Part shown: piece by piece, positions 1-33,873 of the stretch
Layout of the letters: every line of letters starts with the position of its first letter
How positions within the stretch are numbered: the first letter of the stretch is position 1
From: Octopus bimaculoides
Lineage: Eukaryota
Reading direction: 5' to 3'
Assembly (NCBI RefSeq): GCF_001194135.2
Contig: NC_068981.1
Location: 12,671,652-12,705,758 of the forward strand
DNA: 34,107 bases
Notes under the pieces: generated by a model
Database searches by the model: none
What the model was told of the DNA's origin: nothing
The model's input: the letters and a program-made list of their open reading frames with translations, nothing else
Made by a program: the position numbers and the translations under genes

Positions 1-36
1 ATAATAATGATAATAATAACAACAACAACAACAACA
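1..36. repeat. (ATA)n/(ACA)n trinucleotide microsatellite
   Basis: Read directly: ataataatgataataataacaacaacaacaacaaca. Confidence 0.95.
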
Positions 37-39
37 TCG

Positions 40-217
40 AAATATACCTTAGGAATGGGAACCCTGATTCGAAATTTCCCGAAGACACCTGATGATGGCT
101 GGAGGGTATATCAGCCGAAACGTCGTGTTAACAACAAACAAGATCAGCACAAATATCCGTCAATCGAAAATAATGTAAATAATGTACATAATTCCTCAAC
201 TCTTAAATATAGAACTA
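40..217 (+). mobile_element. Probable 3' end (pseudo-LTR) remnant of a Penelope-like element
   Basis: Carries a minimal hammerhead motif at 84-129 and runs into a TA/TG microsatellite at about 218. The PLE-HHR association is established; the family assignment and boundaries are inferred. Confidence 0.55.
84..129 (+). ncRNA. Minimal type I hammerhead ribozyme motif (dimer-type helix III)
   Basis: GACAC(84-88) CTGATGA(89-95) T GGCTGG-loop-TCAGCC(97-116) GAAA(117-120) C GTC(122-124) GTGTT(125-129). Helix I has 5 bp, helix II 6 bp; helix III is the ACGT palindrome; cleavage triplet GUC. Confidence 0.8.
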
Positions 218-1751
218 TATGTATTTATATATGTGTGTGTGTGCGTTTGTGTGTGTGTGGACGTGTCTATATGTGTTGGAGAGTGCGAATTTGCGCATAG
301 TATATGTATGTGGGGCTGTGTATAGTATGTGTGTGTGAGACTATTGGACGGGTACGTGTGCACACGTGTGTTTGTAGCAGCTCATGTGAGTAGCGTGTGT
401 ACATGTGAGTGAGTTTGTACATGAATTGTGTCTCTTCACCTTAAGTGTGTGCGGCACTATAGTATGCATGTGTACTGTATGTGCTTATACAGAAGATCAG
501 GTTGCACAAATTATACTCAGAGTAACTAGAAGATATTTTATTCTGATATACACTCGAGGGAGATAAGAGATATCCAGTGTATGTAATTTGGGAGTTCAAA
601 CAATACTTTTCAAAACATGGATGGAATTTATTGACTAACTTGTATAAAAGCTATTCATAAGCGATTACTTGGGGTTGCAGAGGGAAGTTATCTCTGTTAC
701 ATGTTAGTAGAAAGAGAAAAATAGCGTCATGTTTGGTTGTAAGAGCATGAATTGCATAAAAATTGAAATTTTACTTGACTGATTCTTCTTGTTGCTTACA
801 GAAACACATGCCCTAGTTGAGCGAACCTCTCGTCATATGCATTCAATTCAAGACTGACCTGTATTTACGTATAGAAAACTTCGAAATATATCATATATAC
901 AATGCATTGTTTTAGTAAGATAAGATTTGGCAACTTTAATCGAAACCTCATCATTACCTCGACCACAATAACGCTTTTGAGAGCTCTTTCTCATTTCCGT
1001 CTGTAGTTATTGCTTGTAAAACGAAATGTTATCTTAGCTTTTGGGGAGTGTTTAAGTTTAAATAAAGGAAGTGACAATGTCTTGTCATGTGTAATGTTTG
1101 CATAATTTTATTGGAAATTTTCCAATGGGCGGCTCGTACCATAGCTGGTCGTATCAAACTAATTGTTTGAGGACGAGATACGATCAAACACTCCGCCGAT
1201 AGCGCCTTCTTGAAAAAACAACCACCCGTCTTGATCACACTTTACAATAAATTTTCATGAAGAATGCTAAAATAATCCAAATAACGATTATTTAAATACG
1301 GAGTCACGCTGCACGATTGTAAAACATTGCATAATGTAATGCGAAGTATACTATATCTAATGTTTTATGCCTTCAACTTTTTTGATAAAATGTGTAAACA
1401 ATCAAGAATCACTTAGAGATGAAACTAATAATACGAGCAACTCAATAGCAACGTGCTGGACACAAATATTAGTTATTCTATAGCGGCTAACCACTTCATT
1501 TATCACTTATTTTGCCTACAATATTGTTGTGTGGACATCCCCAGGCGATAGGTAGGCTAGTCCAATACGTATAAATGGCTAGACGAAAATCGTCGAGCAG
1601 AACGCAGGAGCGAAAAATTGGAGTTGAGTTTGAGAAGGGACATATCGTGAGTGAATTGTTATTGAATATTGTTGTTGAAAATTTGTTGAAATTACTGATG
1701 TTATTAATTTTGTTGAAAATTTGAGAATTGTTTGTATACCTTGTGATATAA

Positions 1752-2814
1752 ATGCAGACTACGAGTTACGCGGCAGCGGCTGGCAAAATCCGGTCGGCTG
1801 ACGCTATGGAAATGAAAGAGGTGAACATAGAGATGAAAAAGATAAGGAGACATTTCGAATTTTTGAAGATGGAGGGAGACTGCCTTCGGGTTAGTCAACC
1901 GAAAGAAGTGATAGAAAAAGCAGAAAAGAGAATAGTAATGTATAAAACGTTAAATGTAACAACAAAAAGAATTGATATAGCGGAGGCCGACGAGATTGAG
2001 AAATGTTTAAGTGGAATTATGGAAGTGATAACATTCTACCCGATAGGAAAAAATTATGGTACAGTGGTGGTACATTTCAAAAGCGAGGAAGAAGCGAAGA
2101 AGTACTCGGATAAGTAGGCACTTTTGCCGGTGTAGTGCGGTAGAAGAGCAGCAAGAATAAGATTTGGGAGAATATCCCCCGAGATAGACGTAGGACGGCT
2201 GGTAGCAGCTGTGGTATATAATTGCAAGGGCGAGGTGGATATCGTGAAGGTGGAGAGATCAAAGGAGATTAACTGGTGGTGTTTTGGGTTAGAAATTGTA
2301 ACCCATATAACCCTACCAGACCTGCACAACATTGCAAAGGAGTTGGTGCTCCCCGACGACACACGACTGAGGGTCATGGTAGAGGGGAGGCCACCCGTAT
2401 ACTACAAATGTAGAAGTAGGGGACACATGCAAGCGGTGTGTCCCCGAAGAGAGGTACAGGTAGAGGAGGCAGGGGTCAGTGAAGGAGAAGTGGTAGAAGG
2501 TGAAAAGAAGCAGAAAGAAGAAAAACAGGTGAAAGAAGAAAAAGAGGAACAGGAGATAAATGTGGAGGAAACTGCAACAGGGAGAAAGAGAGCACGAACC
2601 GAATCGCCACCATAGAATGCCCCTAAAAAAGAAAAGGAAAAAGAAGACAGTGGAAGAAGAGGAAAATATTGAGAATCGAACCCAAGAACCTGAGGATAAA
2701 GATAAATATGCAAAAGACCCGAAAAGAGCAGCGAAAATCGAAGAATGGGAGAGGAAAGTAGAAGAGAGGTTGTACGAAGCAGAGATTTTTGAGACACCGA
2801 TAAGAAGACATTAA
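1752..2814 (+). pseudogene. Decayed LINE ORF1/gag-like protein (RRM-like region, CCHC zinc knuckle, acidic/basic tail)
   Basis: ORFs 1752-2117 and 2211-2615 share a frame, separated by TAG at 2115 and 2133. Motifs GTVVVHFKSEEEA and VEGRPPV-YYKCRSRGHMQAVCP (CX2CX4HX4C with first C>Y). A frameshift near 2615-2645 leads into the 2560-2814 frame. Confidence 0.7.
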
Positions 2815-2823
2815 CATACATTA

Positions 2824-3075
2824 ATGTACTATGAAAAAGATATAGAGATAGAACAAAAGATATCGAAAATAAGAAGGCTAAATAGAGTAAGGTTGGATCC
2901 GGTGATAATTGAAGGATATGATAAAGCTGCACCGTTAGAAGAGAACGTGATGAAGAGACTGAAAGAGATATATCCGGAAAATATTATAGCGAGTGGATTA
3001 CATGTGCGATATAATAATCTGCCAAAAGTCATAACGACAGAGGATCTATTGCCATATATAACTATTGAAGAATAA
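2824..3075 (+). CDS. Short ORF of unknown function inside the TG...CA element, possibly the continuation of the decayed ORF
   Basis: 83-aa ATG ORF with protein-like composition, same strand and purine bias as the upstream ORF; no recognised motif. Confidence 0.3.
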   Translation: MYYEKDIEIEQKISKIRRLNRVRLDPVIIEGYDKAAPLEENVMKRLKEIYPENIIASGLHVRYNNLPKVITTEDLLPYITIEE

Positions 3076-3617
3076 AAAGATCATAAACCTGTAAAAAGGC
3101 TGTGTAAGAGAACAATTAAATGAAACTGCAAGATTTGGGGGGCTTGTAAGACATTTCATCGTTTCATTGTAAGTAATTCATTTCATTCATCATTCGTTCT
3201 ATGTACCTCACGTTTTGTTTTGTCTATCTGTCCTCGAATGTCTATTCTGTGTTAAGGTTTAATGCCTATAATAAAGAGTACGTGCAGAAGAGCGAAACGG
3301 GGCCGTCGGTAGAGTAGACGTCGTGTTCGGTAAAGTCGAGTCGTCGGAAGTGAGAGTTGAGTAAAGGTCGTCCGCATGTGTGATATAACAAATATATGGC
3401 TTAAGTTCAAAAATATGACACCTTTCACAATATTTCTTAATGCATGTGATAGAATATTGTCATGTGTAAAATATAATTAAGAATAAAAGGAAATTATTTC
3501 ACCTGCTTGGAAATGCTCCCCATATTTTGACTTCATTTTTGCATTTATGCAAAAAGGATGAAAATTATTCTAAACAGACTATTATGTGTTGCATTTACTC
3601 TATATTATTCCGCACAG

Positions 3618-8630: not shown

Positions 8631-8726
8631 TTGTGGCGTTTTCCCTGACAACGATTTTATGCATTAGAAATGATACATCTCTAAATCTCTCAGAGGGACT
8701 TAAGCAGTAGTGATACGATAAAGTAG

Positions 8727-9051
8727 TTGTATGCTGCCAACGTAAAGTGACAGTCCCATGAAGGGAATCATACTACTGCTATTTAGCCCTAGGAAACTGC
8801 ACCGCTTCCTGTCGAGCTTGTCACATTTCTTGTGTCCTTGTGTTTACGAGGGGAAGAGAAGCACCTCCACCCAAATGGTGCTTTCTTTCAAATACACCTA
8901 GATTTAGGTGGAAGTGCTTGTATCCCCCTCGTAAACATAAGGACAGAGGAAATTTGTCAAGGACGACAGGAAGCTGTGCAGCTTCTTAGGGCTAAATAGC
9001 AGTAGTATGACTCTCTTCATGGAACTGTCACTTTAAGTTGACAGCATACAA
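8727..9051. repeat. Fold-back inverted repeat, 150-bp arms, 25-bp spacer
   Basis: Arms 8727-8876 and 8902-9051 align without gaps; 20 mismatches counted by hand (about 87% identity). Confidence 0.95.
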
Positions 9052-9329
9052 GGATTTTAGGAATACAAAATGAAAAAAACGGAAACACGTTGTAGAAATC
9101 ATCCTCCTACAGATAGCAAGACATTTTCTTCAAATAAAACTTAAACCATTAATAATAAGGAAAATCATATAGGACAATGAACTCCTACGTCGGTTATATC
9201 TGAAACAGATGGCGATCCTTGAAATATTTCGGGTGAAAAGTAAGGATTTTTTAATTATATAATAATAATAATATAAACAGTCGAAAAATTGGAGTATTAA
9301 AATATGTATATGGTTATTGACAATAACAT

Positions 9330-18490: not shown

Positions 18491-19342
18491 CACGGAGATA
18501 TCAAAGAGTTCCCGGCTTAGTTCTCTAGTACGCTTAGTTATAAGACAACAGCATACGGTTGCATTTAGAGTGAGAGCTACTCGTGACGTTCGTGAGACAG
18601 TGTGCCCAGTGACATCGCTGTGTTTGCTTGCAAGTTGCGAAATTTGATTTGCGAAATTTTGTCACGGACAGGAGGTTGGAACAAAGAACTAATGTGGAAT
18701 TTTGTATTAAACTTGGGAAGGGTGCTACACAGTCATTGAGCATGCTTCAGCAATCTTACGGTGAGGAGGCAATGGATCGTTCGCAATATTTCAAGTGGTA
18801 TGGGCGCTTCAAACTCGGAAGAACGTTCCTGGAAAACGATGAGCGTTCCGGAAGACATACCATGCGTATCGACCCCTGGAAATGTGGTGAAAAGTCCTCA
18901 GCTTGTGCATGAGGAACACCGAGGTCATTCAATGACGTTTTGAAGAATTTCAAGGATGCCATTTGGCGAAAATGACCGGATATGTGGAAGGCGAAGAATT
19001 GGATTCTTCACGGCGACAATGCACTCTCTCCTCACTCGTAAGTTCCTGGGCAAAGACAACATGGTATCGCCTCCACACCTGCATGATTTGCCAGATTTAG
19101 CACCTGCCGACTTGAATCTCTTCACCAAGTTCAAAATGCAGTTCACCGTTGTCGAAATCCAGATCGAGTTAGAAAAGGTCTTCGAGTCGCTTACAGTAAA
19201 TGACTTCCAGGCTGGATTCTAAATGTCGCAGGAACTCTGGGATCGGTGTATTACAGCGCAAGGTGACTATTTTGAAGGAGATGATGTTAAAACTTAGGTA
19301 AATAAGTTATTTTTTATTAATCATAACTAATCCGGGAACATC

Positions 19343-33816: not shown

Positions 33817-33873
<57 letters not shown>
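33817..33873. repeat. (ATT)19 microsatellite; on the minus strand it is the (TAA)n tail/target of the adjacent LINE
   Basis: Read directly. Confidence 0.95.

What the first reader, a model, noticed from the sequence alone, without database searches (positions are those of the whole stretch)
1525..3390. Integrase-style TG...CA element with 5-bp TSD carrying only a LINE-ORF1-like zinc-knuckle gene
Seen in sequence: exact AATAT duplication, TGTT...AACA termini, CCAAT/TATA near the 5' end, one decayed RRM-like plus CCHC ORF, a G6 polypurine-like tract before TGTAAG (3145), and AATAAA 115 bp from the end. There is no RT, integrase, APE or poly(A) tail. Established: TG...CA with a 4-6 bp TSD is the signature of LTR retrotransposon (BEL/Gypsy) or Ginger integrases, whereas the VEGRPPVC..C...GH....CP context is typical of L1/Tx1-type ORF1p. 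Inference: this is either a giant solo LTR that captured an ORF1 gene, or a new non-autonomous element encoding only an RNA-packaging protein.
Basis: partly seen in the sequence, partly recalled or inferred. Interest (0 to 1): 0.75.

Follow-up and report, generated by a model that had tools for sequence, protein, structure and literature searches.

The report
Decayed ORF1-only LINE copy in octopus
This is a broken copy of an octopus "half-LINE", a jumping gene that keeps only the RNA-binding ORF1 protein of an L1/Tx1-type LINE and must borrow the copying enzyme.

Summary
The window is octopus DNA. Positions 1752-3075 are one decayed ORF of about 440 aa: two RRMs, a CCHC knuckle, a linker and a conserved C-terminal domain. 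It belongs to an octopod multi-copy family.

In three relatives (L001, L006, L008) this ORF is the ORF1 of a LINE whose ORF2 has APE, RT and zf-RVT domains, which marks it as L1/Tx1-like. In four other copies, as here, no ORF2 follows. ORF1 runs into a conserved 3'UTR and the LINE's own tail (TGCCTATAATAAAGAG), which a SINE-like element also carries.

Homology to all relatives starts at about 1612-1616 and stops at about 3283. An imperfect 14-19 bp target duplication flanks exactly these points (empirical p about 0.002). An equivalent duplication flanks copy L002 (p about 0.001).

So the retroelement is 1616-3283. It is a HAL1-like, ORF1-only LINE derivative inserted by target-primed reverse transcription.

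The TGTT...AACA ends and the AATAT repeat bound a separate 184-bp GC/CpG-rich unit that it landed in. That unit may be a solo LTR or may be chance.

This is a new member of a known kind and of modest interest.

The parts
1520..1524 (.). AATAT, left copy of the 5-bp repeat that flanks the outer unit
   Evidence: Read directly. Weak on its own: 157 TG..CA + 5-bp pairs occur in the window.
1525..1596 (+). Left arm of the outer GC/CpG-rich unit. It starts TGTTGTGT and holds CCAAT (1562-1566) and TATAAA (1570-1575). It is not part of the LINE-derived element.
   Evidence: For 1525-1617, GC is 48% and CpG o/e is 1.34, against 30% GC in the left flank. No significant similarity to the flanks or 5'UTRs of any relative.
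1597..1615 (+). 5' copy of the inner target-site duplication, GCAGAACGCAGGAGCGAAA
   Evidence: Matches 3284-3297 at 14 positions with one 5-nt gap. Only 0.18% of equally spaced random 30-nt pairs from the window score as high.
1616..1751 (+). 5'UTR of the ORF1-only LINE derivative (AATTGGAGTTGAGTTTGAG...). It includes a GTGAGT motif at 1649.
   Evidence: Homology with O. bimaculoides copy L003 begins at window 1612 (73.7% over 99 nt) and is absent upstream.
1752..3075 (+). Decayed ORF1. Approximate layout: N-terminal region and RRM1 about 1863-2106, RRM2 about 2136-2393, CCHC knuckle 2400-2441 with its first Cys now Tyr, acidic/basic linker 2442-2811, conserved C-terminal domain 2815-3072, stop TAA at 3073. 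Defects: TAG 2115, TAG 2133, TAG 2613 with a frameshift near 2613-2630, TAA 2812.
   Evidence: 59% identity to O. bimaculoides A0A0L8HDN2, E 3e-86. 204 relatives found. Family alignment. AF2 model of an intact member has pLDDT above 90 over residues 30-230, and Foldseek's top hits are tandem-RRM proteins. Defect coordinates.
3076..3283 (+). 3'UTR and LINE tail. Conserved blocks include GGGGGGCTTGTAAGACATTTCA (3137-3158) and the tail TGCCTATAATAAAGAGT (3263-3279, with AATAAA at 3270-3275).
   Evidence: Aligns with the 3'UTRs of ORF1-only copies L002, L004 and L005, with the tails of autonomous LINEs L006 and L008, and with a SINE-like element. Similarity stops in all of them a few bases after AAAGA.
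3284..3297 (+). 3' copy of the inner target-site duplication, GCAGAAGAGCGAAA
3298..3390 (+). Right arm of the outer GC/CpG-rich unit. It contains a 21-bp 1.9-copy repeat at 3306-3344 and ends GATATAACA.
   Evidence: For 3287-3390, GC is 52% and CpG o/e is 2.05, against 26% GC and no CpG in the right flank. TRF result. No similarity to the flanks of relatives.
3391..3395 (.). AATAT, right copy of the 5-bp repeat

Best explanation
Positions 1616-3283 are a dead copy of a non-autonomous, ORF1-only derivative of an octopod L1/Tx1-type LINE, a 'half-LINE' comparable to mammalian HAL1.

**Anatomy (shown).** The RNA carries a 136-nt 5'UTR. It has one ORF for a type-I ORF1p (RRM-RRM-CCHC-linker-C-terminal domain). 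It then has the 3'UTR and the tail of the parent LINE.

**Mechanism (inferred).** It has no endonuclease or reverse transcriptase. It must therefore have been copied by the ORF2 protein of a related autonomous LINE acting in trans. That protein would recognise the shared tail (...TTGTGCCTATAATAAAGAG) and insert the copy by target-primed reverse transcription. This left a target duplication of about 14-19 bp (1597-1615 and 3284-3297). The ORF1p presumably coats the element's own RNA.

**Outer unit (inferred, about 0.4).** The copy landed inside a 184-bp GC- and CpG-rich unit (1525-1615 plus 3298-3390). The TGTT...AACA ends, the AATAT duplication and the CCAAT/TATA motifs belong to that unit, not to the ORF-bearing element. 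Its best reading is a small solo LTR. Otherwise the signature is chance.

The copy has since decayed: three in-frame stops, one frameshift, a lost knuckle cysteine and an indel in the duplication.
For: 1. The ORF family is LINE ORF1.
   - In L001, ORF1 (P0026) is followed 35 nt later by an ORF beginning MALLKVGSINVRGLG.
   - In L006 and L008, ORF1 is followed by an ORF2 with Exo_endo_phos (E 4e-15), RVT_1 (E 2e-31) and zf-RVT (E 2e-8).
   - The L008 RT matches human L1 ORF2p best (E 9e-40, against 3e-24 for R2).
2. The fold is two tandem RRMs plus a CCHC knuckle, with no capsid-like match. This fits type-I ORF1p as defined in PMC5203782.
3. The ORF1-only layout recurs. In L002, L004 and L005 the ORF1 stop is followed by a homologous 3'UTR and tail with no ORF2. 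L010 has the same layout but has lost its tail.
4. The tail is shared by ORF1-only copies, autonomous LINEs and a SINE-like element that has a 13-bp TSD. Similarity ends just after AAAGA in all eight sequences.
5. 5' homology with L003 begins at 1612 and none is found upstream.
6. The inner direct repeat sits exactly at these two break points, with an empirical p of 0.0018.
7. L002 has a 19-bp TSD at the equivalent points, reached in 1 of 1000 shuffles. LINE L008 has a 17-bp TSD.
8. The outer arms differ in composition from both the inner UTRs and the flanks.
Against: - The inner duplication is imperfect: 14 matches with a 5-nt gap.
- Only distant relatives could be fetched. Protein identity is at most 59-76% and UTR identity about 72-74%. 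No near-identical copy shows the boundaries directly.
- No second copy of the outer unit was found, so its identity as an LTR is untested.
- TGTT...AACA plus a perfect 5-bp repeat lying within about 15 nt of both composition shifts is unlikely by chance (rough estimate 0.5%). So some unit does end at 1525 and 3390, and I cannot exclude that the composite later moved as a whole.
- L003 has TGTTGTGT 165 nt upstream of its 5'UTR homology. That is about a 1% coincidence if it means nothing.
- Trans-mobilisation by ORF2p is inferred, not shown.
Confidence: 0.68

Rival explanations
1. The whole of 1525-3390 is one integrase-mobilised unit with TG...CA ends and a 5-bp TSD. It would be either a giant solo LTR that captured an ORF1 gene or a new non-autonomous element. 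In its weaker form, a short LTR was hit by the ORF1-only LINE and the composite LTR was then propagated.
For: - TGTT...AACA and a perfect AATAT repeat. Only 3 such pairs occur in the window.
- The ends coincide with GC/CpG composition shifts.
- CCAAT/TATA lies near the 5' end.
- L003 has TGTTGTGT upstream of its copy.
- L009 shows an ORF1-like gene lying next to an LTR-type pol.
Against: - Homology to all relatives ends at about 1612 and about 3283, not at 1525 and 3390.
- The unit contains an internal LINE/SINE tail and an internal TPRT-type duplication.
- There are no terminal direct repeats.
- The outer arms match nothing in other copies.
- An R region of about 1.7 kb would be needed if this were a single LTR.
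Confidence: 0.1
2. A LINE-type retrocopy whose RNA ran from 1525 to 3390. The ORF1-only element would have an extended 5' leader and a 3' read-through (transduced) segment, inserted by TPRT with a short AATAT duplication. TG/CA would be coincidental, and the inner repeat would be the TSD of the source copy carried along.
For: - The composition of both outer arms differs from the flanks.
- LINE 5'UTRs in this family are variable. L001 and L006 carry a TTTGT(T)GTGG motif inside their 5'UTRs.
Against: - It requires transcription to start upstream of the source copy and also to bypass the tail.
- The outer arms show no significant similarity to any LINE 5'UTR.
- A TATA box would lie inside the transcript.
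Confidence: 0.1
3. The inner element is as in the best explanation. The outer signature would be pure chance and the GC-rich arms would simply be local host sequence such as a CpG-rich patch. There would be no outer mobile unit.
For: - TG..CA plus a 5-bp repeat is expected about 0.5 times within 300 nt of any element here.
- AATATTGTTG occurs twice within 150 nt (1520 and 1665).
- No other copy of the outer unit was found.
Against: The 4-nt inverted ends plus the repeat fall within about 15 nt of both composition shifts.
Confidence: 0.1

Closest known systems
HAL1 (half-L1) of mammals
   Same: It is a non-autonomous LINE derivative that keeps the 5'UTR, ORF1 and the 3' end, has lost ORF2, and depends on the parent's ORF2p. 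It forms lineages of its own (PMC5753468). Here four other copies from three Octopus species show the same ORF1-only layout.
   Different: - The parent here is a mollusc L1/Tx1-like LINE with a type-I ORF1p (RRM-RRM-CCHC) rather than the coiled-coil/RRM/CTD Transposase_22 protein.
- There is no poly(A) tail. The 3' end is a specific tail also used by a SINE-like element.
- Subfamilies differ by up to about 70% at the protein level yet keep the layout.
L1/Tx1-clade LINEs with type-I ORF1p (Khazina & Weichenrieder classification, as summarised in PMC5203782)
   Same: The ORF1p has RRM(s) plus a CCHC knuckle. Relatives have an ORF2 with APE, RT and zf-RVT. Some relatives are site-specific, sitting in (ATT)n, as Tx1-group elements often are.
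   Different: This copy has no ORF2. The clade was not assigned by RT phylogeny here.
Solo LTR of a Gypsy/BEL/Copia-type retrotransposon
   Same: This applies to the outer 184-bp unit only. It has TGTT...AACA ends, a 5-bp duplication and CCAAT/TATA near the 5' end.
   Different: No second copy, no partner internal region and no family assignment were found. The ORF and the AATAAA do not belong to it.
SINEs that share the 3' tail of a partner LINE
   Same: The same tail (…CCCTCTxTGTTxAGxCCxTTGTGxxTAxTAAAGA) ends the ORF1-only copies, the autonomous LINEs and a SINE-like element with a 13-bp TSD.
   Different: This element is 1.7 kb and protein-coding. It has no small-RNA head.

Membership tests
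LINE type-I ORF1p (L1/Tx1-like) | At least one RRM followed by a CCHC zinc knuckle | tested here: met
   The AF2 model of intact member P0012 has pLDDT above 90 over residues 30-230. Foldseek's top hits are two-RRM proteins (IMP3 RRM12, UP1, Sxl, HuR). The knuckle is CX2CX4HX4C in relatives and Y-YK-C-RSRG-H-MQAV-C in the window. A PDB profile search hits only CCHC knuckles. Pfam itself finds nothing in the window copy.
LINE type-I ORF1p (L1/Tx1-like) | Encoded directly upstream of an APE-RT ORF2 in autonomous members | tested here: met
   L001, L006 and L008. Pfam finds Exo_endo_phos, RVT_1 and zf-RVT. The best PDB match is human L1 ORF2p.
LINE type-I ORF1p (L1/Tx1-like) | Clade placement by RT phylogeny (L1 versus Tx1 versus others) | not tested
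   No reference RT set was at hand. The zf-RVT domain and the L1 ORF2p best hit are only indicative.
HAL1-like ORF1-only non-autonomous LINE | ORF1 retained, ORF2 absent, and the parent's 3' end retained | tested here: met
   The stop at 3073 is followed by 208 nt of conserved 3'UTR plus tail. No RT or APE ORF lies in 1400-3500.
HAL1-like ORF1-only non-autonomous LINE | Several independent copies with the same layout | tested here: met
   L002 and L010 (O. vulgaris) and L004 and L005 (O. sinensis). L003 (O. bimaculoides) is cut by an assembly gap 45 nt after its stop.
HAL1-like ORF1-only non-autonomous LINE | TPRT hallmarks: variable-length target duplication at the element's own ends | tested here: met
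   Window: 14-19 bp, imperfect, p about 0.002. L002: 19 bp, 1 of 1000 shuffles. L005 is inconclusive (7-11 bp, not significant).
HAL1-like ORF1-only non-autonomous LINE | Mobilised in trans by the ORF2p of the parent LINE | not testable with these tools
   Inferred from the shared tail only.
Integrase-type element (solo LTR, or LTR/Ginger-like unit) spanning 1525-3390 | TG...CA ends with a 4-6 bp target duplication | tested here: met
   TGTT...AACA and AATAT are present. The simple version is common by chance: 157 pairs in the window.
Integrase-type element (solo LTR, or LTR/Ginger-like unit) spanning 1525-3390 | Related copies share sequence up to these same ends | tested here: not met
   Similarity to all relatives starts at about 1612 and stops at about 3283. 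The outer arms match no flank of any relative. Only distant relatives were available.
Integrase-type element (solo LTR, or LTR/Ginger-like unit) spanning 1525-3390 | Terminal direct repeats (complete LTR element) or a full-length parent with pol between two such units | tested here: not met
   No direct or inverted repeat is found between the first and last 300 bp beyond the short inner duplication. No second copy occurs in the window. The genome-wide search for a parent could not be run.
Retroviral/LTR-retrotransposon Gag | Capsid (CA) fold upstream of the NC knuckle | tested here: not met
   The confident part of the model is two RRMs. No Gag/CA structure is among the top Foldseek hits, and only the knuckle matches NC by sequence.
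Penelope-like element / retrozyme with hammerhead ribozyme | Hammerhead ribozyme in the terminal repeat | tested here: not met
   A CTGATGA...GAAAC...GTC core seen by eye in the flanks of L004 and L005 gave no Rfam hit. This held at gathering score and at E up to 10, in the loci and in window 1400-3500. The repeat that carries it is an independent foldback repeat.

The most novel reading that the evidence does not exclude
The composite 1525-3390 is, or was, itself mobile. A short LTR would have acquired an ORF1-only LINE and then been propagated by an LTR retrotransposon's integrase. Octopod LTR elements would then carry a LINE-type RRM-CCHC packaging gene. The Logan contig L009 points the same way: a decayed member of this ORF1 family runs straight into an NC-type knuckle and an LTR-type pol with YLDDIL. 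It could equally be a nested insertion followed by a deletion.
Probability: 0.08. Interest if true: 0.65.

Novelty: new member of a known kind. Interest (0 to 1): 0.3.

Why it matters
For annotation, it shows that a TG...CA-plus-TSD signature around an ORF in AT-rich octopus DNA can come from nesting. It should not be read as an integrase footprint without other copies.

Biologically, octopod genomes appear to hold a diversified and apparently long-lived lineage of ORF1-only 'half-LINEs'. Some members still have intact ORFs that are annotated as genes in three species. They share a 3' tail with autonomous L1/Tx1-like LINEs and with a SINE-like element.

That makes a tidy system for two questions. 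One is what a LINE parasite gains by carrying its own RNA chaperone. The other is how tail recognition by ORF2p works outside mammals. I found no paper describing this for cephalopods, but the principle is established from HAL1.

Tried and rejected
1. **Hammerhead / Penelope-like pLTR idea.** It was prompted by CTGATGA..GAAAC..GTC downstream of copies L002, L004 and L005, and by a 213-bp direct repeat around L005. Rfam gave no hit. The repeat is an independent foldback repeat that also occurs alone in the window at 8663-9059. Dropped.
2. **Flank homology between the window and L003 or L002 seen by eye** (ATAGCGG.TAAC, CGAAAA..GTC.AG). Not significant against dinucleotide shuffles. Dropped.
3. 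**Outer arms as part of a LINE 5'UTR** (TGTTGTG..GGGGCCG in L001). Not significant.
4. **LTR-like or TIR-like terminal repeats within 1525-3390.** None found.
5. **Pfam on the window ORF.** No hit.
6. **Word-index search with the C-terminal half.** No hit.
7. **Word-index search with the 30-sequence profile.** It was swamped by low-complexity words and returned only 3 proteins.
8. **Exact look-ups of the two closest proteins.** Not on record.
9. **JGI metagenome scans** for the outer 5' end and for the ORF. Nothing found.
10. **ARAGORN on the SINE-like insert of L004.** No tRNA found, so I call it SINE-like only.
Full report
**What is in the sequence**

The window is AT-rich (34% GC), rich in microsatellites, and broken by runs of N. 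This is what a draft animal genome looks like.
- AATAT at 1520-1524 and 3391-3395.
- TGTTG at 1525 and ATAACA ending at 3390.
- CCAAT at 1562 and TATAAA at 1570.
- G6 at 3137-3142 before TGTAAG at 3145.
- AATAAA at 3270-3275, 115 bp from 3390.
- No RT, integrase, endonuclease or poly(A) tail.

The element occurs once in the window. It has no terminal direct or inverted repeats.

**The ORF**

Frame 1752 runs to 2612 with two in-frame TAG stops (2115 and 2133). After a frameshift near 2613-2630 the reading continues in the frame of 2560, with one TAA at 2812, to the stop at 3073.

The closest proteins are Octopus bimaculoides 'CCHC-type domain-containing' gene models, at 59% and 76% identity. 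An exhaustive profile search found 204 relatives. All 24 that carry names come from O. bimaculoides, O. sinensis, O. vulgaris or Argonauta hians.

The family alignment shows that the window's last 86 codons (2815-3072) are a conserved C-terminal domain that ends at the family's stop codon. So this is one complete gene of about 440 aa, now broken. It is not a fragment.

An AlphaFold model of an intact member has pLDDT above 90 over residues 30-230. Foldseek's best PDB matches for it are two-RRM proteins: IMP3 RRM12, hnRNP A1 UP1, Sxl and HuR. By sequence, only the knuckle matches solved structures. The layout is therefore RRM-RRM-CCHC-linker-CTD. That is the 'type I' ORF1p described for L1/Tx1-group LINEs of non-mammalian animals and plants (PMC5203782). 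There is no capsid-like domain.

**The family is LINE ORF1, and a branch of it has lost ORF2**

Three relatives sit directly upstream of a second ORF:
- In L001 that ORF begins MALLKVGSINVRGLG.
- In L006 and L008 it has Exo_endo_phos, RVT_1 and zf-RVT domains.
- The L008 RT matches human L1 ORF2p best (E 9e-40).

These are autonomous L1/Tx1-like LINEs. L006 and L001 lie in (ATT)n. L008 has a 17-bp target duplication.

Copies L002 and L010 (O. vulgaris) and L004 and L005 (O. sinensis) resemble the window instead. The ORF1 stop is followed by a few hundred bases of conserved 3'UTR and then the tail, with no ORF2. L010 has lost its tail.

**Where the retroelement ends**

I aligned eight 3' ends: four ORF1-only copies, two autonomous LINEs, a LINE tail upstream of L008, and a SINE-like insert in L004 with a 13-bp TSD. 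They show one shared tail...TGTCCCCTC..TGTGTT.AGGCC.TTGTG.CTATAATAAAGA. Similarity stops in all of them a few bases after AAAGA. In the window that point is about 3280-3283.

At the 5' side, similarity to the O. bimaculoides copy L003 starts at window 1612 and is absent upstream.

A direct repeat sits exactly at these two break points:
- GCAGAACGCAGGAGCGAAA at 1597-1615.
- GCAGAAGAGCGAAA at 3284-3297.

Only 0.18% of equally spaced random segment pairs from the window align as well. Copy L002 has a 19-bp duplication at the equivalent positions, reached in 1 of 1000 shuffles.

This is the footprint of target-primed reverse transcription. The element proper is therefore 1616-3283.

**What the TG...CA ends belong to**

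The stretches left over are 1525-1615 and 3298-3390, which make 184 bp when joined. They are 48-52% GC with CpG o/e of 1.3-2.0. The flanks are 26-30% GC and the inner UTRs 27-34% GC.

These stretches match nothing in the flanks or UTRs of any relative. They have no second copy in the window or in about 115 kb of fetched octopus DNA. They were not found in JGI metagenomes.

TG...CA plus a 5-bp repeat is common by chance here, with 157 pairs in the window. TGTT...AACA is rare, with 3 pairs, and both ends lie within about 15 nt of the composition shifts.

My reading is a nested structure. A short GC-rich unit with integrase-like ends, most simply a solo LTR carrying the CCAAT/TATA, was later hit by the ORF1-only LINE. 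I hold the inner claim at about 0.7 and the solo-LTR sub-claim at about 0.4.

**Mechanism**

Shown:
- The gene content.
- The shared tail.
- The inner duplication.
- The recurrence of the ORF1-only layout.

Inferred:
- The RNA is transcribed from an internal 5'UTR promoter and coated by its own ORF1p.
- It is reverse-transcribed at a nicked target by the ORF2p of a related autonomous LINE that recognises the tail. This is how HAL1 depends on L1 (PMC5753468) and how SINEs depend on partner LINEs.

**Verdict**

The integrase interpretation is not supported.

It is a new member of a known kind, and this copy is dead. What I could not do is search an octopus genome by nucleotide. That single step would confirm or overturn the nested model (see next steps).

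Noticed in passing
window 18628-18909 (+): Fragment of a mariner/Mos1-type transposase N-terminus (Pfam HTH_48, E 1.8e-8). It is an unrelated DNA-transposon relic.
   Followed up: partly
window 8663-9059; L005 3763-4175 and 6117-6325; L010 3315-3887; L002 5674-5820: A foldback repeat of about 400 bp occurs alone in the window. In L002, L005 and L010 it lies, together with a spacer of about 100 nt, just upstream of the ORF1-only copies. In L002, L004 and L005 the 3' junction is followed, after an 11-19 nt TSD-like stretch, by the same foldback-centre motif AC(T/A)(G/T)(A/T)TGA...GAAACT. This suggests a Tx1-like site preference for that subgroup.
   Followed up: partly
L009 1-2832 (Logan SRR11869391 contig, seen in 5 samples): A decayed member of the ORF1 family (about 615-1390) lacks its C-terminal domain and tail. 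It runs straight into an NC-type knuckle (CFGCGKIGHKNSHC) and a pol with RVT_1 and YLDDIL, which is the LTR-retrotransposon type. The sequence ...CA|TGGTGGCCACGTGG at 84/85 looks like an LTR end plus a primer-binding site. It could be a chimeric gag, a nested insertion followed by a deletion, or an assembly artefact.
   Followed up: partly
L006 9720-9778 and 15347-15380; L001 10-23: The autonomous LINEs of this family are bounded by (ATT)n on both sides, so they look specific for this microsatellite. The window itself has (ATT)19 at 33817-33873.
   Followed up: no
L004 5453-5688: A SINE-like insert with a 13-bp TSD (GTTATGATGTTTC) lies inside an ORF1-only copy. It ends in the same tail as the LINEs. 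ARAGORN finds no tRNA in it.
   Followed up: partly
window 1649-1757; L003 about 4501; L006 about 9853; L008 about 3391; L002 about 5946: A donor-like GT(G/A)AG motif (GT(G/A)AGT in all but L002, which has GTGAGA) lies 12-75 nt from the 5' end of both autonomous and ORF1-only members. In the window an acceptor-like TGCAG overlaps the ATG at 1752. This may be a 5'UTR intron or a conserved promoter element.
   Followed up: no
L008 3300-3378 and 8610-8720: A LINE tail lies directly upstream of the L008 LINE, and its 5'UTR-like sequence recurs after its own tail. This points to head-to-tail arrays of this LINE.
   Followed up: no
proteins P0034 (1041 aa) and P0073 (654 aa): Gene models join an ORF1-like piece to WD40 repeats (P0034) or to a long unrelated N-terminal region (P0073). 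They are either chimeric annotation or exonised ORF1 fragments.
   Followed up: no
window 3-216; L005 10019-10473: Another repeat family is shared at 77-86% identity. In L005 it forms a 440-bp palindrome.
   Followed up: no
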